Part shown: positions 51,739 to 64,000 of the stretch, one piece after another | How positions within the stretch are numbered: the stretch's first letter is position 1 | Layout of the letters: every line of letters starts with the position of its first letter | NCBI GenBank assembly: GCA_001179505.1 | Contig: CDMY01000091.1 | Span: 62,001-126,000 of the forward strand | Source: Vitrella brassicaformis CCMP3155 | Lineage: Eukaryota > Protista > Chromerida | Direction: 5' to 3' | DNA: 64,000 nucleotides | The notes under the pieces: model-generated | What the model was told of the DNA's origin: nothing | What the model saw: only the letters and a program-made list of their open reading frames with translations | Database searches by the model: none | Made by a program: the position numbers and the translations under genes

Positions 51739-54700
51739 TCATTGATCCCCATCACACCCCCACAAAGCGACACACTCAGCCACCGCTCTCCCTTTCCCTT
51801 CGCCGTCGTCATGCTCTATCGGCAGCAGCATCGGCATGGTCGCCATATCCGTCTCGCGAGCCCTTCGCCCTCCCTCCGGTCCTCCCTGCAGCCATCGCCT
51901 CTGCAGCATCTCTGGCGGGAGCTTGATGCTGATCTCACGAGGGTCCAAGGCGGACTGCGAAGGCATCTCCCTACTCTGCAGCATGGAATGATACCGGCCG
52001 ACGATGGTCTTGACGTCGGGCAGCATGTCGACTCTCGTCGTGGGGGGTCCGAGGGGTGGCGATGGCGGGGGGAGGGGATAGTCGCTCGGCGATGCAGAGA
52101 GTGTCTCCACCTGGCTCGGACGGTTGCTGGCGCTGGGGGACGACCGACGGCTCAGAAGGGCGAGAGGTGGCGAGGGGTGGGCGGTTGACGAGCTGCTGGT
52201 GGTCGTGGTGGTCGTGGTGGACAGTCTCGTGGCGTGCCGCTTGGACGACGGCAGCGCTTCTGTAGTGCGATGGGAGGCCCTCGCCTTGCCGTTGAAGAGG
52301 AGAGGGGGCAGCGACAAACTCAGCGCTTGAACGAGAGGAATCTCGTGCCCACAATCACCACTGTCACCACATGCGTCCTCCCTCCTGACAGCCGCAGACG
52401 CGCCGAAGACTCTCGGCTGATGGTGCTGCTGGTCGTTGTCCTTTGCTGTGGCTGTGAGGACGCTCGCCGGGTGGAACGGGGGAGGGGAAGGGGGGCCGGC
52501 GGCAGACTCGTCACCGTCACAGACAGAGAGACATTTGGCCCGGGGGAGTGGATGGGGCAGGGCTGGCAGCACCGGCAAGGAAGGAAACGCCTGCCAGTGC
52601 TCGTGACTCAAGGTGGCCGACCAGTGGTACCTGAAAACCAAATAAAGGAGGAGCTGAACCGCTCTTTGATTTCTGCGTCTGTGCTGTTTTCACCCTTTAA
52701 GGGCTCCCACGATTGCGCTGCGCCACTCCGACGCGCCAGACACCTTGTCTAACGGCTCCTGCATGCAACACATCAGAGCCGCAGTAACGTGCATCACGTG
52801 TGTCTGCATTCCCATCGATGTTCTTACGTGATTGCCCCTCAGTGTCGGTCCCGCCAGCTGTGGATACTCGTACTTAAGCTGCGCCTGGTAGAAATGTTCC
52901 AGCCCCCTCACTGCCCTCGACGCATCCGTGCCCTCCGCCCCAGTCCACATGAGAGCGCGACGCTCCCTCGCGGCGTCGTCTGGCGGGTCGCCAGTCGGCA
53001 TTGGGCTTGGGGCGTCCTCCAAGATGGAGAAGGGCGGGATGAGCTCGATGGATGGGTGTGCGGGCGGGGTCGGGAGGAGGGGGGCTGGGCCTGGCTATGC
53101 AAAGAACGGCACATGAGAGGGGTCATGGGGAAAAAGGCCTGCCTGTGATGCCCACCTGGCTTGACGATGTGTCTGAAGGGGTCTTGTCTGAATGAGACAT
53201 CACCCGGCTGTTGCGTGGTGGTGCCACCGCCGCCACTGTCAGATGCCACCTGGTGCTGGAATGGCACGATGTGGCAGACGTCGCTCATGCGCTCCTGGAG
53301 GAAGACCGCCAGCTTGGTGAAGCCCAGAGACTGAAAATGGAGGTTCTCGCCGTGCTTCAACCGATACAGCTCACGCACCTGCGACAGACACACGCCTGCA
53401 GTGCAGGCAGGATACAGGAGACAAAAAGCAAGCGGCCAATGGGCAATGGTGTCCATCTATCTGCATGCCGACTTGCCTCTCGGATGCGTCTCCAGCATCT
53501 CCGCGAGTTTCCTCTTGATCTGCGCCACACGCAAGGCCTCCCCACTCATGCCGGGATGCAGCATGAGGCTGCCACCCACACACGCATCGTCGCTCTCCGC
53601 TCTGAACGGCGGCGTGACGCTGGGCTGCGGTGGATGGTTGCTGCTCTTGAGGAGCTCGGTCTGGAAACGCTGATTGGCGCGGGCCCACAGAGCTCTGGTG
53701 AGTGGGCTGCAGGCCACCAGGGGCTTGATGCAGTTGTTGTCGTAACTGAGACAGGAAGAAAAGACCGTGCTTACATGCAAGAGAGGTGGTGGTCCATGTG
53801 AATGTGTTGAGTTGCCCACCCTGCCAGGTTGAGGTCGAGGGTGAGCTGGATCAGCTGACACAGCCGCCCTAACGTCAAGCCACGCAATAATGGAGGACCT
53901 GAGCAACACATCAACATGTGGAAGCCAGCCTTTTTCCCTGCTCCGGGTGTGTTGTATTGCCTGATCGTTTGATCTCGCTGGCCATGAGGAATCGCCCGCC
54001 CCCAAAGCCGCCCAGTGCCCCCATGCCGATCCCCGCACCTGACATAGACACACATCGCCAGCCCACTCGCCCACCCCGCATCCTACCGTCTTGTGTCTCA
54101 CTCACCGAGAGTGCCCTGCCCTCTGGCGATCTGGTTGGCGGCCACGCGCATCTTGTCTAGGATGTACAGCAGCAGCACGCCAAAGTACCCACAGCTATAG
54201 TCATATGGAATGACCGATCCGCTCGGATCGATAAACCCCTCAAAGCCCTCGGGCGTTTGCTGCAGATAGATGTGCGCATCCCTCCCGTGCGAACCCCCCC
54301 CACCCCCTCCCGCTCCCCCACTGCCAGACGCCCTTGTGTTGGGCGAGGAATCATCGCCGTGGCTGCTGCTGCTGCTGCTGCCGACCTGCGACACCTGGAA
54401 GACATCTGGCGTCTGGCTGCACAGATCCAAGAAGTGCTGATGCAGGTACCCGCAGCAACACACACTGGTGGTGGTGCGCTGCCCGCCCTCCTCAGCCCCC
54501 CGGCCCCCCTTGTCCGACCGATGATGCCGCATGCGCTCCAGCCGCCTCCTGACCTCGCTGCTCAGCGGGCGGATCTGCTGTGCATACAGCTCACGCACAA
54601 GGGACTGGAGGATGCTGATGTGGTCCTGGCGCGAGAAGCCGCACGAGCAGTAGGACGCCCGAAACACAGTCGCGTTGGTGAATACAGTGGCATGGGGTGC

Positions 54701-55189
54701 GGCTCCTTCCTTGGGCTTGAAAGGGGGAGGGGGCGGCCACTGAGTAGTGCGGCCATGTCCATGGCTGTGCGTGCGGCCCCGTCCTTTGCTGTTGAATGTG
54801 GTGTGCCGTGGAGGGGGCAGCGGGCCGCGGTGGCCATTCGTCACGCCGGGGCTGCCGGAGTGATCTCTCCTCTCCCATCCATTCGGGCCGTCGTCTCGGC
54901 CGGCAGCAGGCACCATGAACGGTGGTGCATTCTCGTGCTGCCGCTCACTGTAGGGGAAGAAGTGGTATGGCGGCGCATCTAATGGACTCAGATCGCCCTC
55001 GTCCGTCCAGAAGGGGACCGTTGGCTGCTGCTGCTGCTGACGTCCTGAGCTGAAGCCGTCATAGCTTGAATGAGGGCTGTCGGCGGCCTGCGATGGATAA
55101 AAATGAGCAGAATCGATGAAGGGATCGGAATAAGCCGAGTAGGCATCCCCATAGAACGGTGGCGCATGCCAAGAGCCGCTCTGCATCAT
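51739..55189 (-). CDS. OST-HTH-associated (OHA) + LOTUS/OST-HTH domain protein
   Basis: ILQSLVRELYAQQIRP..EVRRRL, GFEGFIDP, GGRFLMASEIKR..LRGLTLGRLCQLIQL..LSYDNNCIKP (OHA-like); VRELYRLKHGENLHFQSLGFTKLAVFLQERMSDVC (LOTUS: Y..hG..L.f..LGF.KL..FL); long low-complexity ends. Confidence 0.82.
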
Positions 55190-55368: not shown

Positions 55369-56488
55369 ATGTTGCCTCGGCCTCCAGATGATGAGGATGA
55401 ATGGGATCCGACCAAGACGGAGACGAAAGGCAGCGCTCAGGGCACCAAGGGAGGCGTGATGCGGGTGGACCTGGCGTCAGGCAACATTCGCTTGCAGCCG
55501 CACTTCAACCCCTGGCAACGTAGGCACGAAAACGAGATGCCCAGACAGACAGACAGGCGAATCGTTCGTTCTCGGCTGGCCTTCTTGTGGTTTGTTGCTG
55601 CTTCCATCAGCTTCTGAGGAGGCGCCGATACAGGGAGGAGTGAGGGATGATACCAGAGAGGCAGCACGGCATGCGTCATGTGTGTGGTGTGATGGATGGC
55701 CTGCTGCAGGATGAGCTCTATGACCCTGATGCCGATGACGAAGACGCCACTTGGGTCCAGACACACCTACGTAAGCACAGGAAGCACCCGCACCAACAAT
55801 CGTGATGGATGCCCTCACTCGGCCACGTTTTCTTCTTTCCTTTCACTCAGGTCATGGCATCCCCCGCACGTCCGACGAGCCACCGCCTGACGATGAGCCG
55901 CCAGATGCTAACCAAGAAGCGCAAGAAGAAGAGGCCGAGAGGCAGGACAATGCCATGGCGGAAGATGAGAATGGTGACCGTGACGAGACGATGGCGTCAG
56001 TGTTCGAGGAGCATCGCGAGAGGCTGCCATGGAAGCTGGCGCAGAAGGCGCGGAGGGAGGCGGCGTCCGCGTCGGATGGAGTGCTCAACTGCATGGGATG
56101 CTTCACGCCTCTGTGCTACCAGTCGCAGCGGTGATCCATACACACACAACGACGGCAACACACACACACACACACACACACATGAATTCAATGAGTGTGG
56201 AGATCTCCCCCTCCCTTGCTGTGTCTTGTGTTGTGTTGGTGCAGGCACGAGAAATATGCCCATCAGTATCGCGCCATCGAGGCCGTTCACTGCCGCATCG
56301 ACCCCTCCCACATTCTCAACCCTGCATCTCTCACACTCAAGCCACGTGCCCCGCCCGGCCACCCCGACAGCGGGCAGGAGGACGACCCGGTGAGTCCTGT
56401 GTTCTGCGCCGAGTGTGGGACGCTGGTCGGTGCGCACGATGACGAGGGCATCTACCATTTTTTCCAAGTCATCGCCAGCGATGGATGA
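55369..56488 (+). CDS. EAPP: E2F-associated phosphoprotein-like (Eapp_C zinc-binding domain)
   Basis: DELYDPDADDEDATWV, SDGVLNCMGCFTPLCYQSQRHEKYAHQYRA, PVFCAECGTLVGAHDDEGIYHFFQVIAS. Confidence 0.92.
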
Positions 56489-56779
56489 CGGATGATATAT
56501 ATGGTTGGCGGCGTCAGCGTCGTCTGCCTGCTGGTGGGGCCTGTATGTGTAATGGGTGGGTGGGTGTATTCTTGTCTGTCTGTCTGTGGTGTCACTCTTG
56601 AGTGTAGGCATGTGAAGGACAAGTCAGTCACTGTCTGTCTGTGTGTGTGTGTCGATCCATGTGGATATTTATTGCATGTGTGTGTCAACAAGTACCATCC
56701 ATTCATCTGGAATACTACAAAGGGTCGGTCCTGTCCTCCCATCACACGCGAAATACCACTCGTCACATCCATCATTCCA

Positions 56780-59700
56780 TCATTCGTCCCTCAGTGCCGT
56801 CTCACACATCGATGAAGACAAGGCAGAGGCGTGGTTGTCCTCTAGCGACCGCCGGATGGCCTCCTCAATCTGCTCCTGCTCTGTCTGGGGCACAGCAGGG
56901 GGATGCTCACGATGATGATGATGGGGTGGGGTCGGAGCCACCCACCCAGCAGGTGGGGGTGGCACCTGGCGGGGGCTCGGTGGGAACCAGTCGTCAACGT
57001 ACTCATCGCCCTCCCCTTCCCCTTGCTCATCCTCTTGCCGTGGCTGCATATCGGGGCGGCCATTGGCTGCCCTCTCTCCCCCCTCCCAGTCATCGAACCA
57101 GCCGTCTGTCGTGGCGCTGAGCGGCTCCTCGTCACTTGTGAGAGGCCCACGAGAGAAGGCCGATAGCTCTGAGCCGATAGCGGCCCTGACAAAGGCCAGC
57201 TGCTCCCGCATCAGCCGTGCCTCACGAGAGCCAACGTGCGGACCCATCGACACACACGGGGAGGGGGCGAAGAAGGCGGGCGAGAAGGCTTGTGCTGGCT
57301 GAGCTGTTGGCTGCACTGCCGGCTGGTGGCTGATGCCGCGCCGCTTGGCGTAGTCGGTGTACCTGTTCTTGAGGCGGATGAGCTCCTCGGGGAAGACCAT
57401 CCATGGGAAAGACAGAAAGTCGCGAACAGGCGTCTCGGAGTCGTCATCGAGGCCCATTCCCCTGGACACAGGCAGGATCAGGATGCCGATCGTCTGTCTG
57501 CCTGTGTGTGCTGTGCGCATGAGTGGCTTACAGCTGGGCCAGGACAGATAAGTCTTGCCGCGTGACGACGTAGGCGGCTGATGCTCGCGCGAGGCGAAGG
57601 TCCACAACAGTGTCGTCACCTGCATTGGCTGAGGTGACTGGAGCGGCCAGCTGCTGCTGCATGGACTCGCGCAGGATGGTCAGCTCCACTGACAGCTGAC
57701 AATGGAATACACGGATAGACGAGTGTGTGTGCTGTGTGCCTGTCCGTGTGTCGACTTCACTGCTGACCTTGGTGGCAGCATCCCGTTCTCTGGCGGTGGG
57801 CTCCTCTTGCCACAGAGCGACGCACCCCATACACGCCTGCAAACCAGCGCATCATCGCACGTGCGAACCGGCCGGGAAGGTCGGATGGTGCGTCAGTCAC
57901 CTCAGCTTCTTTCGCCACGCCATACTTCCGCATCAAACACGACAGCTGCGGGCGGCACAAACACGCACGCTGCACTTGGATGGATGATGTCGGGTCCCTC
58001 TCCTCTGCTCTGCATGCACCTGGTGGTTCCACATGTCGCGGTGCCTTCTCATGTCGTCCTGGTGCCTCTCATAGTCGCGATGCACCAGCTGCCAGTCCAC
58101 AGCAGGGGGCAGCGGCTTGTCCCTCGGCCACACCCAGGCAGCGTCGCCGTCATTGTCAGTCTCGGGCTCATCCTCCGGGCCGATGGTGCTGACGCCGCTG
58201 CTTCCAACGGCGGCCCCCTCGCTGTCGCCATTGTAGGTGGTCTCCTCCGGTGTGTCTACACCACCATACACACACACACACAAGGATGGCGGGTTTTCTG
58301 TGTGTATGGGTCTATCTCTCACCGGTCTGTTGGCTCATGCTTACAATGGCACCAACGGTCTCCGCTTCCACTGCCGATGTTGTTGCCACGGCCTTCTCGC
58401 CAACACCCTCCCCCTTGATGTGCCCGTACGACGGCACCAGAGTGCGGCGAGCAGCCGCCAGCCGCGCCAAGGGGCGGCGGATGAAGAAGTCGATCGGGTG
58501 ACCAGTGGTGCTGGTGCTGGTGCAGCTGAGTGTGGGGCTGGAGAGGCACGCGAGCGTGGCGGCGTGGGTGCTGACCTCCATCTCGTAGGTCACCGAGGGA
58601 CGGGTGAGGGAATCGCCAAGAGGGCTGCACGAGCACAGAGAGACCACAGACAGACAGACGACAGACATGAAGGGGGTCTGTGTCAGCGGCTTTCTATCTC
58701 TTTCTGCGTACTTTTCGCCTCCGATGGGACGTTCCTCGATCCACACGATCTCTCCGGTGAGATGGTGCGTCTGGGCCCAGAAGCTATATAGACGGGCAAC
58801 GAGCTCATCCTGCACACACATGACATGGGGAGTCGTTTCCTGCACCACATTGGTCTCCGTGTGGATGCATCGGGCCGTAGAGGACCATGTCAGCGGTGCA
58901 GTTGAGGACCTCCACTCTGCGCGGCTTGCGGAAAAACTGCTCCAGGTGGCCAGCGCCCTCTCCTAAACACACAACACATCCATTCACGAAATGAGAGCTT
59001 TTCGTGTGTGGCGGGGCGGGGCGGGGCTTGCTCACGGAATCCTGGTGCGCTGATTTCTGCTGCAGGGCTGAGTGTGTTCTTGTTGGCCTCAAAGGCAGCA
59101 CGGAAGCCCTCGGCATCACCCACCGTCTGCAGAACCACACACACACACACACACCCGTGCCCATACAGACGGACAATTTCTGTGAGCTGGGCTGACCAGG
59201 AAGATGATGTCGATGGGCGAGCAGCACGTGTGTGTGTCTGGTGGGCGGATGAGCACGTCCACGTAGCTGCTGTTGCTCTCCTTGAGCATGGCCATCAGGC
59301 TGCCGAAGGCCGCCACGAAGCTCCTGCTGTGGTTGTGCAGCTGAGGGTTCTCACAGGGGGTCAGCTCAGCCGCTGCAGAGCACACACATGAAACACAGAG
59401 ATAGGAAGAAGCCGATGGCCGACTGTGTGTGTGGTCTCACCGATGTTGGTCACTCTGAGGATTCTGTCCGTCTTGGGCTCTGGCATTGGGAAGGCCTTAT
59501 CGGCTGCTGTCGAGCGCCCCTCCACACACCTGCGGTATGCCGTAATCCAGGGATCCTCCTCTGCACACACACACACACACACAAGGAGAGAGAGAGAGAA
59601 GGCAACCACACTCATCCATATGTGTGGATTGTCCAGGACTCACCCCAGCTGACGGCAACGGCGATCTGCTGCCCGCGGTAAGTGAGAAATACCTCCGGCC

Positions 59701-61974
59701 TGGGCCGTCCGCTTTCCTGGCACTTGACCTCGAGCACCCGCATCACCTCCCTCGTGAGTGCGGCTGAGGCGAGTGTGATGGCTGCCGTGTACCAGCTGCA
59801 GCTGTGCGATGAGGGCGGACACACCTCTGTCAACAGCTGACATGACACAGACATCAAACAACACATACAAAGGGACTCTCCCCCCCCCTTCTCTCTCTCT
59901 CTGTGTGTGTGTACCCATGCGGCCGAAACGACAGGCCCGTTCGCTGGAGGACGTCTGACGATGGCCCTGAGTGCTGTGTCCATCTCGCCCTGCAGCAGGT
60001 TGACCCCCAGACCACTGAAGGGCACCGTCACGACCAGCGTGTTGCAGTGAAGCAGATCGTCTGCACCGCCGACACACACACGACACCAGCTGGTGTGTAT
60101 GTGTATGTTGGTGTGTGGGTGTGGGTGTGGGTGTGGCTGTGGGTGCATGCCTACGTGGCAGTGATTGTGCGGCAGTGTATTTCGGGTCGACGTCGATGAC
60201 CAGCGGCTGGCACGGGGGAGAGGGGCCGCTTCGGTTGCCGTCAGAAAACACCACCTGCACTCGGAACTGCATCCAGCCCCAGTGGATGGGCACCGACACA
60301 CTGGCCTTCGGTGCGGGGCTGTGGGTGTCCGCCGCCCACTCATCGCTCGGACCACACGCACTACACACAGCACAACACAACACAACACAACACACGACCA
60401 TTGATCCAGTGCACTGTCTGTCTGTCTGTCTGTCGTACTCATTGCTGGTGCAGCACGTGATTCGGTGGCCGTAGACGTGTCTGGCCATCCTCGGGGGGAT
60501 GGACCAGTGCACGGCGATGGACCGCTGCCCGTCCTTGACGCCACGGGGGCTCGCTTGCACATTGAAGGGGGTGTCGCAGTCACCACCTGCACCCACCGTC
60601 AGGCAGACACGAGTCGTGCAAAGGCTCGGCTCCGCGGTCTTTGCTATGTCTGTTTGTTCGGTGCATACCTCCTGCTGCTGCTGCTCGTGTGTGTGTGTCG
60701 TCGAGTGAGTCGTCGAGCGCTTTGACGGCTCGCGTGACGACGCCGATGGGCGAGTCCGACATGAACACCCTGCCTCTCTGTAATTGCAGAAAGACATGCC
60801 GGCAGGCAGGCAGGCAGGCAGGCAGACATACGCATATACCTGTTTGTGGTGCTCTTTGGCCATGAAGTCCGGGATTATCTCAGGCCGCAGCGTCTCGGGC
60901 AGACGCACCGGCACGCCCGTCTTGGGAAAGTCCACCTGAGAATGAATGGAGTGTCGTGTGTGGTCTGTGTGGTCTCATATCTGCCTGCCACTGACCGCTT
61001 GGCTGTGCAGCTCAGCCAGCCTCATGCAGTGGGGGTGCAGGGCCTACAGAGGCACACACACACACACACACATGATACCGAATACTGAAGGCTTGTGTGT
61101 GGCTGTGTGTGTGGGTGACCTTTCTGTGTGCGTAGATCTCCGTCTGGTGCGGCATCGCCAGACACGCGCGGGCAAACACTGAGTAAGTTGCAAAGAGGAT
61201 ACACACAGATGCGACAGCCCCACACAGTCCCATCTGCTCACCGCCGAGATTGTAGTGGAGGAAGTGCCGCACAATGTAGCTCTGCAGACACATTGACACA
61301 CACACAGCACACACAGAGAGAGAGAGGAGAGGAAGCCCCGCCCTCCCCAGCCACGCACCCACCTTCTGTGCGCGTCTTCTGCCGTCCCTCGTGTCCATAT
61401 TCCCTTCAAAAGGCACCGCTGCCGGCTGCCCAACGCTCCGATCAGGCACGTAGCACTCGGCTGCTGGCGGGTTGGGCGTCGTCGGGATCAGCCGGCCGTC
61501 CCACAGTATGTGGAACTGGTCGCCGTCTAAGTCACCACCTGCACATCCACCTGTGTGTGTTGTGCTGTGTAGGGGGCTGCCTGTGGGGCGTACCAGAGAG
61601 TTGGTTCGGTATTGGTCGGTCGCCACGGACAGGGAAGACGATGACATTGACGAATGGCCTCAATTGTGGGTGGTCGACGGCAGTGAGCACCCGGAGGTCG
61701 CCCGCATGCAGACAGGGGTTGCGCGCAACCACCACTGGGCCTGTGTGTGTGTTTGCGACATACACATACACATCATTATCATTACCAGGGGTGGGTGGGG
61801 GGTGGCTGGACGTGTTGTTGGGAATGATACCTGTGATGACTTGCCGCCTCGTGTCGTCAGGTCTTTGGATCTGGATGAACACCTGGTCGGCTTCGAGCAC
61901 ACCGACCTCGTCAGACACGCCGAAGAGATACGCGCCTTCCTGCACACACACAACACACACACACACACACACAA

Positions 61975-62014
<40 letters not shown>

Positions 62015-64000
62015 AACCGCCGCTCTCTCTCTCTCTCTGTGTGTGTTTGTGTGTGTGTATGTGTACGTGGATGTAGAGGTGTGTCTTGATGCGGACGTCC
62101 TTGTGCATGTAGCGCAAAGCAGCGCGGATGCATGACCGCAGAAAGGGGTCATCCGACGGGCAGAAACCCATCTGCAGGGCCTACACATCACACACACACA
62201 TACGACGACCATGCATCACCACATGCCTCTCTCTCTCTCTCTGTGTGTTTGTATGTGTGTGTGTGAGGGTACCTGAACAATGGTCTTGCGAAAGGAGTGC
62301 TGTGTGCCGATCCTCTGGATGAGCCGCAGCGCCGCCCCCTTGTGTCTGAGGGCGTTCAGCCCGTCGCGCAGGTTGTCCTTCAGAATGGCGACAAACATCT
62401 ACACACCACACACACACACACACACATAACCACACGAACGCTACTAAAGGTGGGTCGCTGTGTGCCTGGTGCGGTATGCCGCGAGTGTCGAGCATCATGA
62501 TGATCTCGCGGTTGAGGTTCTCGGGCAGGAAGCGGCTGACACACCCACACACACGCACACACACCCACACACACAGAGAGAGAGAGAGAGAGATACACGC
62601 GCGTGTNNNNNNNNNNNNNNNNNNNNNNNNNNNNNNNNNNNNNNNNNNNNNNNNNNNNNNNNNNNNNNNNNNNNNNNNNNNNNNNNNNNNNNNNNNNNNN
62701 NNNNNNNNNNNNNNNNNNNNNNNNNNNNNNNNNNNNNNNNNNNNNNNNNNNNNNNNNNNNNNNNNNNNNNNNNNNNNNNNNNNNNNNNNNNNNNNNNNNN
62801 NNNNNNNNNNNNNNNNNNNNNNNNNNNNNNNNNNNNNNNNNNNNNNNNNNNNNNNNNNNNNNNNNNNNNNNNNNNNNNNNNNNNNNNNNNNNNNNNNNNN
62901 NNNNNNCCCCCCCCCCCCCCCCAACACACACACTCACAAGTCCATCTGCCGTGCAGTGCAGCGGATTCTGCGCACCTGAATTGCGCACGGTTTGTCGGCC
63001 AGGTGTTCGGCCTCCCATATCTCACTCATCAGCGACGGGTGTATCACGCCACAGCCATCTGCAGACACACACACAGAGACGACTGCTCTCCCTCTCTCTC
63101 TGTCTGTGTGTGTGTGTGTGTGTGTTTGTGTGTGTGTCGAGAGACTGACCAGTAAACTCGTAAGTGCCTTTCTGTGGGAAATCGGGGTCGATCGGTCGTG
63201 TGACGTCGGCTTCAACGAGCACCTGACAGACAGACACCACATGTGTGTGTGTATCTGAGGGTCTGTGTGTGTCTGTGTGAGGGTGTGCTTGCCTGTTCCA
63301 TCGGGACATGGATGCCGCTGCGTGTCGACGAGAAGGGCAGGCCCTGCGCCTTGACGTACTTCCCTGCACATACACACACACACCTCACACAGATCGCACA
63401 GACACACACACACACGCACGCACCGGGCGTGTCAATGCCGCTGAAGTCGCCCAGGAACCTCTCGACATCTTCCAATGACAACCGGCCTGCATGGCAGGCA
63501 GACAGACAGACACACAGCCGCCTGTGTGTGGAGGGGTGGGTGTGAGTGGATGTGGCTTACTGCTGCTGGCGAAGAACCAGGAGGCATTGGTCCGCAGCTG
63601 TGAGGAGCTGCAGCCGAGGAACCTGTAAGTGTGCTGCAGGCCGGGGACGCGGATACCTGCACAGACACACACGTTTTCTCTCTCTCCCTCTCTTTCTCTG
63701 TGCGCGTGTGTGTGTGTGTCCGTGTCTGTACCGGCCTCCAGCACGTGTCTGAGCCTCTTCTGCGCGAAGATCATCCACTGCGGGTCGTCGCCATAGATCG
63801 AGCCGAGATCCTCATCTGCACCATCCACACACACACACACACACGAGCATATCTGTCTGCCACATGTAGATCTCTGTGTGTGTGTTTGTGTGCGCAGGTA
63901 CCGACGAAGCTGACGCGCATGAACTGGTCTGTGTGTGTGCAGAAGTGCCTGAGCACCCTGTTGCTCTGCTCGATGTACTCGCCGCCCACTACCACCTTCA
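56780..64000 (-). CDS. Cellular (QDE-1/RDR-type) RNA-dependent RNA polymerase with long C-terminal extension; 5' part outside window
   Basis: SNRVLRHF..FMRVSF, FLGCSSSQLR, FLGDFSGI..GKYVKAQGLPFSST, DGCGVI, LNREIIMML, LFGVSDEVGVL..QVF, VVVARNPCLHAGDLR, NVIVFPVRGDRPIPNQLSGGDLDGDQF (catalytic DLDGD ~61519-61533), LAELHSQAVDFPKTG, PDFM. Downstream exons stay in phase to the stop at 56780. Confidence 0.95.
62607..62906. other. Assembly gap (300 N) inside the RdRP gene
   Basis: Run of N; probably hides one or more RdRP exons between PCAIQ and SRFLPENLNRE. Confidence 1.

What the first reader, a model, noticed from the sequence alone, without database searches (positions are those of the whole stretch)
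56780..60780. RNA-dependent RNA polymerase fused to FN3-like, RRM-like and ubiquitin-interacting modules
Seen: after the RdRP core (..VDFPKTG..PDFMAKEHHKQ|RGRVFMSDSPIGVVTRAV) I could follow a consistent phase through each junction to the stop at 56780; one donor near 58890 is weak. The extension contains an FN3-like module (TPFNVQASP..SIAVHWSIP..YGHRITC..MQFRVQVVFSDGNRSGPSPP, ~60140-60580) and an RRM-like stretch (DRILRVTNI..FVAAFG..YVDVLI, ~59170-59480). It also has an unassigned helical region and a terminal UIM-like motif (EQEQIEEAIRRSLED, ~56838-56882). Knowledge: characterised cellular RdRPs (QDE-1, plant RDRs, nematode RRF/EGO) end in helical neck/head domains, and I know of none with FN3 or UIM. 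Inference: an RNA-silencing amplifier recruited through ubiquitin (ubiquitinated chromatin, stalled ribosomes or viral complexes), i.e. a possibly undescribed ubiquitin-guided RNAi branch in a lineage whose parasitic relatives largely lost RNAi.
Basis: partly seen in the sequence, partly recalled or inferred. Interest (0 to 1): 0.82.

Follow-up and report, generated by a model that had tools for sequence, protein, structure and literature searches.

The report
Vitrella RdRP with FN3/RRM-like insertion
This is an expressed gene of the alga Vitrella brassicaformis for an RNA-silencing-type RNA-dependent RNA polymerase that carries an unusual ~590-residue insertion (an FN3-like domain plus RRM-like domains) between its catalytic core and its ordinary C-terminal head domain; the proposed ubiquitin-binding motif at the end is only an unverified string match.

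Summary
Spliced transcript contigs from two studies and a public 1189-aa protein (P0001) give one ORF on the minus strand, from the DLDGD catalytic exon (61538) to the stop at 56780, through 20 GT-AG introns. The organism is Vitrella brassicaformis CCMP3155. The locus is already in GenBank/UniProt as CEL92609.1 / A0A0G4E9M8, named 'RNA-dependent RNA polymerase'; that model is cut short at its 5' end by an assembly gap.

The 'extension' is mainly an internal insertion of about 590 aa.

- **FN3:** supported at fold level on an AlphaFold model (Z 10.7 to solved FN3 domains), but below threshold in Pfam.
- **UIM:** the string fits the consensus, but it has no HMM support, is absent from the paralogs, and arises by chance in 1-3% of shuffles.

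Three Vitrella paralogs share the insertion. This scan had already noted it on other DNA of this genome. No relatives were found outside Vitrella, but those searches were weak. It is a new variant of a known enzyme; the ubiquitin-guided RNAi idea is unsupported.

The parts
61939..64000 (-). Upstream exons of the same gene, encoding the first ~340 profile positions of the RdRP domain. They are interrupted by an assembly gap of N at roughly 62.6-62.9 kb. The gene runs off the window at 64000.
   Evidence: PF05183 profile 8-46 matches 63771-63995. tblastn of paralog P0071 residues 563-902 maps to 63998-62064. The annotated protein P0151 starts just below the gap.
60724..61939 (-). RdRP catalytic core exons (second double-psi beta-barrel, DLDGD metal loop at 61519-61533, AVDFPKTG, end of PF05183). 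Exons: 61831-61939, 61594-61740, 61363-61538, 61242-61281, 61120-61178, 60996-61043, 60840-60935 and the start of 60669-60777.
   Evidence: PF05183 matches P0001 8-254 at E 2.4e-65 and the exon 61595-61939 at E 7e-27. Joints come; splice sites.
60162..60581 (-). FN3-like beta-sandwich (P0001 275-388), split over exons 60439-60586 and 60155-60360.
   Evidence: AF2 model residues 8-121 match solved FN3 domains at Z 10.7-9.4, rmsd 2.1-3.9 A over 87-105 residues; 45 of the top 50 rows fall in this range and nearly all are FN3-type domains. Foldseek finds FN3 of titin, myomesin, growth-hormone receptor and EphA2 at prob 1.00, E 2e-3 to 9e-3. Pfam fn3 scores only 12-14 bits against a cut-off of 25. 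The Trp of ..HWSIP.. is invariant in the 4 paralogs.
59535..60155 (-). [quoted passage not shown]
   Evidence: AF2 pLDDT is about 80-89 and the secondary-structure order is as stated. The best solved match is the PID-3/TOFU-6 RRM, 7ocx_C, at Z 9.4. There is no Pfam RRM hit, and the RNP1/RNP2 consensus is absent.
59064..59474 (-). Probably a ferredoxin-like alpha/beta domain, but the type is not settled.
   Evidence: The block is conserved in the 4 paralogs. The AF2 model has low confidence (pLDDT 50-60 here, 38.8 overall) with order beta-alpha-beta-beta-alpha. VIA matches ACT domains at Z 8.4-8.1 and RRM/UHM domains at Z 7.0-5.5. Atlas feature neighbours are all of the RRM clan, but at scores 0.80-0.84, which is a lead only.
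58453..58954 (-). Module M3 (P0001 636-748): a further block conserved among the paralogs; fold unknown.
   Evidence: Seen in the paralog alignment. The AF2 model is unusable here. hhalign finds no similarity to M1 or M2.
58098..58452 (-). Variable acidic/Thr-Ser-rich linker (P0001 749-844).
   Evidence: Poorly aligned and of variable length among the paralogs.
57320..58097 (-). Canonical RdRP C-terminal neck-3/head region (P0001 845-1010).
   Evidence: BLAST of P0001 840-1015 hits the C-termini of 13 ordinary RdRPs from animals, algae and others at E 4e-11 to 3e-4, and the paralogs at E 2e-24 and 4e-17.
56783..57319 (-). Disordered Pro/Glu-rich tail (P0001 1011-1189). It holds four acidic-flanked Trp residues and the UIM-like string at 56837-56881. 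The stop codon is 56780-56782.
   Evidence: Composition. UIM regex hit. No Pfam hit. Trp motifs.

Best explanation
The locus is one expressed gene of Vitrella brassicaformis for a cell-encoded, QDE-1/RDR-type RNA-dependent RNA polymerase. It is one of four paralogs in this genome.

The catalytic core looks intact: DLDGD and AVDFPKTG are both present. This family differs from described RdRPs by an insertion of about 590 aa (about 710-720 aa in two paralogs). The insertion sits after the end of the Pfam core, that is after the bridge-helix/trigger-loop segment, and before the canonical neck-3/head region. It consists of an FN3-like beta-sandwich, a well-modelled RRM-like domain with degenerate RNP motifs, and two more conserved blocks. 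One of those blocks is probably also ferredoxin-like. After the head comes a non-conserved, disordered acidic/proline tail.

Inferred mechanism, not shown: the enzyme makes complementary RNA as other RdRPs do. The inserted FN3/RRM-like array projects from the neck/head side as a built-in docking platform. I think it more likely binds protein partners than RNA, because FN3 domains are usually protein-binding, the RNP aromatic residues are missing, and the nearest solved RRM is a protein-binding one. The platform would couple the polymerase to other silencing factors or to its templates. The UIM-like string in the tail is at most a paralog-specific short linear motif.
For: - **One transcript, one ORF:**
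- **Organism and public accession:**
- **RdRP membership:** PF05183 at E 2.4e-65, with DLDGD and AVDFPKTG present.
- **Insertion rather than extension:** the distance from DLDGD to the equivalent head position is 761 aa here and 882-890 aa in paralogs P0071 and P0136. In 13 ordinary RdRPs it is 156-232 aa, median 171.
- **Conservation:** the insertion blocks are conserved in four paralogs.
- **FN3 fold:** Z up to 10.7.
- **RRM-like M1:** pLDDT 80-89, Z 9.4 to the PID-3/TOFU-6 RRM.
- **Reference domain order in RDR2** (DPBB2, bridge helix, trigger loop, neck 3, head): PMC8713982.
Against: - The structure model rests on a 4-sequence alignment and has mean pLDDT 69.9, with only 62-80 in the FN3 part.
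- Pfam fn3 is below threshold, and there are no RRM hits.
- The second model (M2/M3) is unusable at pLDDT 38.8.
- No experiment or structure places the insertion relative to the cleft, so 'docking platform' and 'protein rather than RNA' are inferences.
- The N-terminal part of the gene lies outside the window and across an assembly gap, so the full architecture is not seen.
Confidence: 0.8

Rival explanations
1. The C-terminal UIM binds ubiquitin and recruits the RdRP to ubiquitinated chromatin, ribosomes or viral complexes, giving a ubiquitin-guided branch of RNAi amplification.
For: The string EQEQIEEAIRRSLED fits the acidic-Phi-x-x-A-x-x-x-S-x-x-acidic consensus, which I recalled from memory. 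It lies in a disordered acidic tail 18 residues from the C-terminus. It is the only such match in 155 RdRP-related proteins, 107,709 residues in all. There is a very weak phmmer hit to the Vps27 tandem-UIM structure 1q0v, E 8.3.
Against: Pfam gives no UIM hit even at E<=10, on the tail or on a 40-50 aa piece of it. The three paralogs lack the motif. The regex arises in 1.1% of tail shuffles and 2.9% of whole-protein shuffles. That is not rare for a reader scanning many windows. No orthologue is available to test conservation, and nothing links the gene to ubiquitin.
Confidence: 0.07
2. The inserted RRM-like/ferredoxin-like modules bind RNA and extend the template or product path. This would be analogous to the N-terminal RRM of plant RDR2, rather than a protein-docking role.
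For: M1 has the RRM topology. M2 is compatible with RRM/UHM folds. The RDR2 RRM binds single-stranded RNA and helps define the template path, and the tip of its head faces the cleft (PMC8713982).
Against: The RNP1/RNP2 aromatic consensus is missing in M1: beta-1 is TLVVTVP and beta-3 is WYTAAITL. The best solved match is a protein-binding RRM. For M2 the best matches are ACT domains. No RRM HMM gives a hit.
Confidence: 0.25
3. The functional element of the tail is a set of acidic-flanked Trp (GW-like) motifs that acts as an Argonaute hook, not a UIM.
For: The 179-aa tail holds four Trp residues in the contexts DGWF, DDWE, DDWF and AGWV. The Trp of the DDWE context aligns with a Trp in an acidic context in P0071 and P0136. 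An earlier unchecked note of this scan, s1-201807, raised WG/GW motifs in another RdRP of this genome.
Against: There are only 2 strict GW/WG dipeptides. The tails of the paralogs are Trp-poor, at 0.6-0.8%. The alignment in the tail is unreliable.
Confidence: 0.1
4. The architecture is an artefact: two adjacent genes, or a chimeric assembly, read as one.
For: Contigs cannot by themselves prove a single molecule. The same contigs also run 500-740 nt past the stop, probably into the convergent EAPP-like gene.
Against: The ORF of 1092 aa has no stop across 20 spliced junctions. Contigs from two studies have the same structure. The canonical RdRP head region lies downstream of the insertion, so core and head must belong to one protein. 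Three paralogs have the same collinear order.
Confidence: 0.02

Closest known systems
Plant RDRs, e.g. Arabidopsis RDR2 (cryo-EM structure, PMC8713982), and Neurospora QDE-1
   Same: Both have the PF05183 two-barrel core, the DLDGD metal loop, the AVDF.KTG segment, and a C-terminal neck-3/head region that is detectable by BLAST. One Vitrella paralog (P0136) also has an N-terminal RRM_1, as plant RDRs do.
   Different: About 590-720 extra residues lie between the end of the core and neck-3/head, where ordinary RdRPs have a few tens of residues. The DLDGD-to-head distance is 761-890 aa here against 156-232 aa elsewhere. There are also long disordered tails.
Vitrella brassicaformis paralogs CEM03318.1 (2625 aa), CEL96798.1 (2754 aa) and CEL96779.1 (1669 aa)
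   Same: They have the same order of core, FN3-like, M1, M2, M3 and linker, followed by the head in the two longer ones. Identity in the insertion is 21-31%, and profile hits are E 1e-97 to 1e-133.
   Different: They lack the UIM-like string. Two have much longer tails of 600-725 aa. The annotated 1669-aa model ends before the head.
FN3 domains of titin, myomesin, Ihog, Sidekick-2 and cytokine receptors
   Same: The predicted model has the same seven-strand beta-sandwich, with Z 9.4-10.7 and rmsd 2.1-3.9 A. The strand-B Trp is conserved.
   Different: Sequence similarity is below the Pfam cut-off. Here the domain lies inside an RNA polymerase.
PID-3/TOFU-6 RRM domains of the C. elegans PETISCO complex (7ocx) and U2AF-homology motifs
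   Same: [quoted passage not shown]
   Different: There is no detectable sequence relationship, and the function here is untested.
Ubiquitin-interacting motifs of Rpn10/S5a, Vps27, Hrs and epsins
   Same: The 15-residue string fits the consensus spacing and lies in an acidic disordered region.
   Different: It is a single copy, has no HMM support, is not conserved in the paralogs, and has only modest statistical weight.

Membership tests
Eukaryotic cell-encoded RdRP (PF05183; QDE-1/RDR/EGO-1 type) | Match to PF05183 above the gathering score | tested here: met
   P0001 8-254 matches profile positions 340-582 at 221.8 bits against a cut-off of 23.8. The start of the profile matches 63771-63995.
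Eukaryotic cell-encoded RdRP (PF05183; QDE-1/RDR/EGO-1 type) | Catalytic D-x-D-G-D loop and the conserved AVDF.KTG segment | tested here: met
   DLDGD is at P0001 99-103 (window 61519-61533) and AVDFPKTG at 204-211.
Eukaryotic cell-encoded RdRP (PF05183; QDE-1/RDR/EGO-1 type) | C-terminal neck/head region homologous to other RdRPs | tested here: met
   P0001 840-1015 hits 13 ordinary RdRPs at E 4e-11 to 3e-4.
Eukaryotic cell-encoded RdRP (PF05183; QDE-1/RDR/EGO-1 type) | RNA-templated RNA synthesis | not testable with these tools
   This needs recombinant enzyme.
Fibronectin type III (PF00041) | Profile match above the gathering score | tested here: not met
   Scores are 13.9 and 12.1 bits (E 0.065 and 0.23) against a cut-off of 25, and only the first half of the profile is covered.
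Fibronectin type III (PF00041) | Seven-strand beta-sandwich that superposes on solved FN3 domains | tested here: met
   On a predicted model with pLDDT 62-80 in this part: Z 10.7-9.4, with 45 of the top 50 rows in this range and nearly all FN3-type domains. Foldseek gives prob 1.00.
RRM (Pfam clan of PF00076) | Profile match to an RRM family | tested here: not met
   No RRM-family hit at E<=10 on the exons, on read-through pieces or on P0001 segments.
RRM (Pfam clan of PF00076) | [quoted passage not shown] | tested here: met
Met for M1 (P0001 391-512): pLDDT 80-89, and Z 9.4 to 7ocx_C.
RRM (Pfam clan of PF00076) | RNP1 and RNP2 consensus with exposed aromatic residues on beta-3 and beta-1 | tested here: not met
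   Beta-1 is TLVVTVP and beta-3 is WYTAAITL. The paralogs are equally degenerate. The consensus used is the one quoted in PMC8713982.
Ubiquitin-interacting motif (PF02809) | Consensus acidic run, Phi-x-x-Ala-x-x-x-Ser-x-x-acidic | tested here: met
   A regex match at P0001 1157-1171. The consensus was recalled from memory.
Ubiquitin-interacting motif (PF02809) | Profile match | tested here: inconclusive
   No hit at E<=10. HMMER's filters can drop very short, weak matches.
Ubiquitin-interacting motif (PF02809) | Conservation in relatives | tested here: not met
   The motif is absent from the three paralogs. No orthologue is available.
Ubiquitin-interacting motif (PF02809) | Ubiquitin binding | not testable with these tools
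   This needs a pull-down or NMR experiment.

The most novel reading that the evidence does not exclude
The FN3/RRM-like insertion together with the terminal UIM-like helix makes this paralog a ubiquitin-recruited RNA-silencing amplifier. That would be an undescribed link between ubiquitin signalling and RdRP targeting in a free-living relative of apicomplexans.
Probability: 0.05. Interest if true: 0.8.

Novelty: new variant of a known kind. Interest (0 to 1): 0.4.

Why it matters
Cell-encoded RdRPs are usually described as a compact core plus a helical neck/head. How they are targeted to templates and partners is known only case by case, for example RDR2 with Pol IV, RRF-3 with GTSF-1, and the fission-yeast RDRC complex. 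A family in which folded FN3 and RRM-like domains are built into the polymerase between the trigger-loop region and the head would be a natural experiment in cis-encoded targeting. It occurs in the photosynthetic sister lineage of apicomplexans, where RNAi has hardly been studied. In the present data it is a structural curiosity without functional evidence. The sequences are public, but I found no paper that describes the insertion.

Tried and rejected
- **Pfam on single exons and in-frame read-through pieces.** Nothing beyond a sub-threshold fn3 hit.
- **Brute-force enumeration of splice chains.** Two attempts timed out and one was under-constrained, giving 1540 solutions. The problem was solved by combining contig record lengths with GT-AG sites.
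- **The search for homologous proteins, three times** (P0001 region 260-835, alignment A1, P0153 region 1028-1580). Only the query's own cluster came back. In some searches the length window admitted known paralogs that were still missed; one search's window excluded all full-length proteins. These blanks therefore say nothing about distant relatives.
- **Scan of metagenome contigs with A1.** 270 pattern matches, none confirmed.
- **Profile searches of A1 and A2 against PDB sequences.** Nothing significant.
- **hhalign between FN3, M1, M2 and M3.** No similarity, so the RRM-like modules are not detectable tandem repeats.
- **Fold search in the ESM Atlas.** Only generic FN3 proteins.
- **The 50-aa tail against PDB sequences.** Hits were driven by His-tags matching the HHHH run.
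- **Precomputed Pfam tag PF26253.1 on P0001**. It could not be resolved with the local Pfam copy.


Full report
**What is there**

The region is GC-rich (about 60%), with short introns rich in CA/TG repeats. The look-up of sequencing runs listed three runs that hold about 99% of the sampled words of 56700-61700, which fits genomic DNA. Five runs hold about 51-57%, as expected for spliced RNA.

I laid four of the about-55% runs on 56450-62400. In three of them (X1, X2, X7) the contigs skip 60-90-nt stretches bounded by CT..AC, which is GT..AG on the minus strand. One contig of run X1 (4642 nt) and one of run X7 (4397 nt), from different studies, cover the whole path. They run from the exon with the DLDGD motif to beyond the stop codon.

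I combined the listed joints, the contig record coordinates and the GT-AG sites. This gave 21 exons from 61536/61538 down to 56780. Every intron is GT-AG and 60-94 nt long. The ORF has 1092 codons and no stop.

A search of 1.84 billion representative proteins with the core exon 61595-61939 returned P0001 (1189 aa, 100% identical). Its last 1092 residues equal my model exactly.

**Identity**

P0001 clusters with CEL92609.1 / UniProt A0A0G4E9M8, an 'RNA-dependent RNA polymerase' of Vitrella brassicaformis CCMP3155, 1268 aa. That annotated model begins just below an assembly gap of Ns.

Exons homologous to the first part of the RdRP domain lie further up, between 62064 and 63998. The real gene is therefore longer and runs off the window.

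PF05183 matches P0001 8-254 at E 2.4e-65. DLDGD and AVDFPKTG are both present.

**Insertion, not extension**

I ran BLAST of everything after the core against the other 149 RdRP representatives. This gave two kinds of hit.
- P0001 ~835-1000 matches the C-terminal ~150 residues of many ordinary RdRPs from animals, algae and others.
- P0001 282-664 matches only three other Vitrella proteins: CEM03318.1, CEL96798.1 and CEL96779.1.

The distance from DLDGD to the same head position is 156-232 aa (median 171) in 13 ordinary RdRPs. It is 761 aa here and 882-890 aa in two paralogs.

In RDR2 the domain order after the second barrel is bridge helix, trigger loop, neck helix 3, head (PMC8713982). The Vitrella proteins thus carry an insertion of about 590-720 aa between the trigger-loop end of the core and neck-3/head.

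Aligning the four paralogs shows conserved blocks in this order:
- an FN3-like block (P0001 ~275-390);
- M1 (393-508);
- M2 (527-630);
- M3 (636-748);
- a variable linker;
- the head (845-1010);
- non-conserved tails.

**Domain calls**

Pfam gives only a sub-threshold fn3 hit (12-14 bits against a cut-off of 25). It gives no RRM or UIM hit.

*First model.* An AlphaFold2 model of P0001 268-512 with the four-sequence alignment has mean pLDDT 69.9.
- Residues 8-121 are a beta-sandwich. It superposes on solved FN3 domains at Z 10.7-9.4, and these make up nearly all of the top 45 rows. Foldseek reports FN3 domains of titin, myomesin, growth-hormone receptor and EphA2 at prob 1.00, with E only 2e-3 to 9e-3.
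[quoted passage not shown] They match the PID-3/TOFU-6 RRM at Z 9.4. The RNP motifs of this domain are degenerate.

*Second model.* The model of P0001 500-760 has pLDDT 38.8 and is not usable. They match ACT domains at Z 8.4 and RRM/UHM domains at Z 7.0-5.5 about equally. Protein-language-model neighbours are all of the RRM clan, but at lead-only scores of 0.80-0.84.

In sum, FN3 is supported at fold level.

**The UIM**

The string at 56837-56881 fits the consensus spacing. It is unique among 155 RdRP-related proteins.

Against it:
- it has no profile support;
- it is missing in the paralogs;
- it arises in 1.1% of tail shuffles and 2.9% of whole-protein shuffles;
- the only PDB echo is a Vps27 UIM hit at E 8.3.

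It remains a hypothesis.

**Distribution and literature**

Among the 150 best RdRP representatives, only the Vitrella proteins carry the insertion.

Word-based protein searches and a metagenome scan found nothing else. The two region searches also missed in-range paralogs, so their blanks are uninformative.

I found no paper on Vitrella or chromerid RdRPs in the held library.

Earlier unchecked notes of this scan describe the same kind of insertion in RdRPs on other pieces of this genome. They also mention Dicer and PIWI-type Argonaute loci. My paralog alignment agrees with the former; I did not test the latter.

**Verdict**

This is a real, expressed and probably active RdRP. It has a lineage-restricted FN3/RRM-like insertion and a disordered tail. 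It is a new variant of a known enzyme family whose sequences are already public. The ubiquitin-guided RNAi idea is unsupported; I put it at about 5-7%.

Noticed in passing
window 55802-56488 (+): A convergent neighbour gene with an E2F-associated phosphoprotein C-terminal domain (PF10238, E 1.9e-15). It ends about 290 nt from the RdRP stop codon. This probably explains why the transcript contigs run 500-740 nt beyond 56450.
   Followed up: partly
window 54101-55189 (-): A 363-aa ORF with a DUF7602 match (PF24549, E 1.1e-7) and low-complexity Gly/Ser/Pro stretches. This is the next gene downstream on the minus strand.
   Followed up: no
window about 62600-62900: An assembly gap (run of N) lies inside the RdRP gene. 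The public gene model CEL92609.1 starts just below it and so lacks the N-terminal half of the RdRP domain, which is encoded at 62064-63998 and beyond the window.
   Followed up: partly
window 61741-61830 (-): An in-frame 90-nt GT-AG intron inside the core exon. It is stop-free, so a naive ORF reading adds 30 spurious residues to the polymerase core. Both database protein models (P0001 and P0151) lack these residues.
   Followed up: yes
window 56940-57100 (-), P0001 1084-1136: Four Trp residues in acidic or Gly contexts (DGWF, DDWE, DDWF, AGWV) lie in the disordered tail. The Trp of the DDWE context aligns with a Trp in an acidic context in two paralogs. This could be a GW-like (Argonaute-hook) or other short linear motif.
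   Followed up: partly
window 56635-56652, 58262-58282, 60414-60434: Short low-complexity repeats of CA/TG and CAGA type attract many unrelated contigs. They cause high depth, spurious long 'joints' such as 56652 to 60414, and loose ends in the read lay-out. This is an artefact, not biology.
   Followed up: partly
P0136 (CEL96798.1), residues 43-98: One Vitrella RdRP paralog has an N-terminal RRM_1 (PF00076, 20.9 bits, just above the cut-off), as plant RDRs do. Whether the gene in this window has one cannot be seen, because its 5' end lies outside the window.
   Followed up: no
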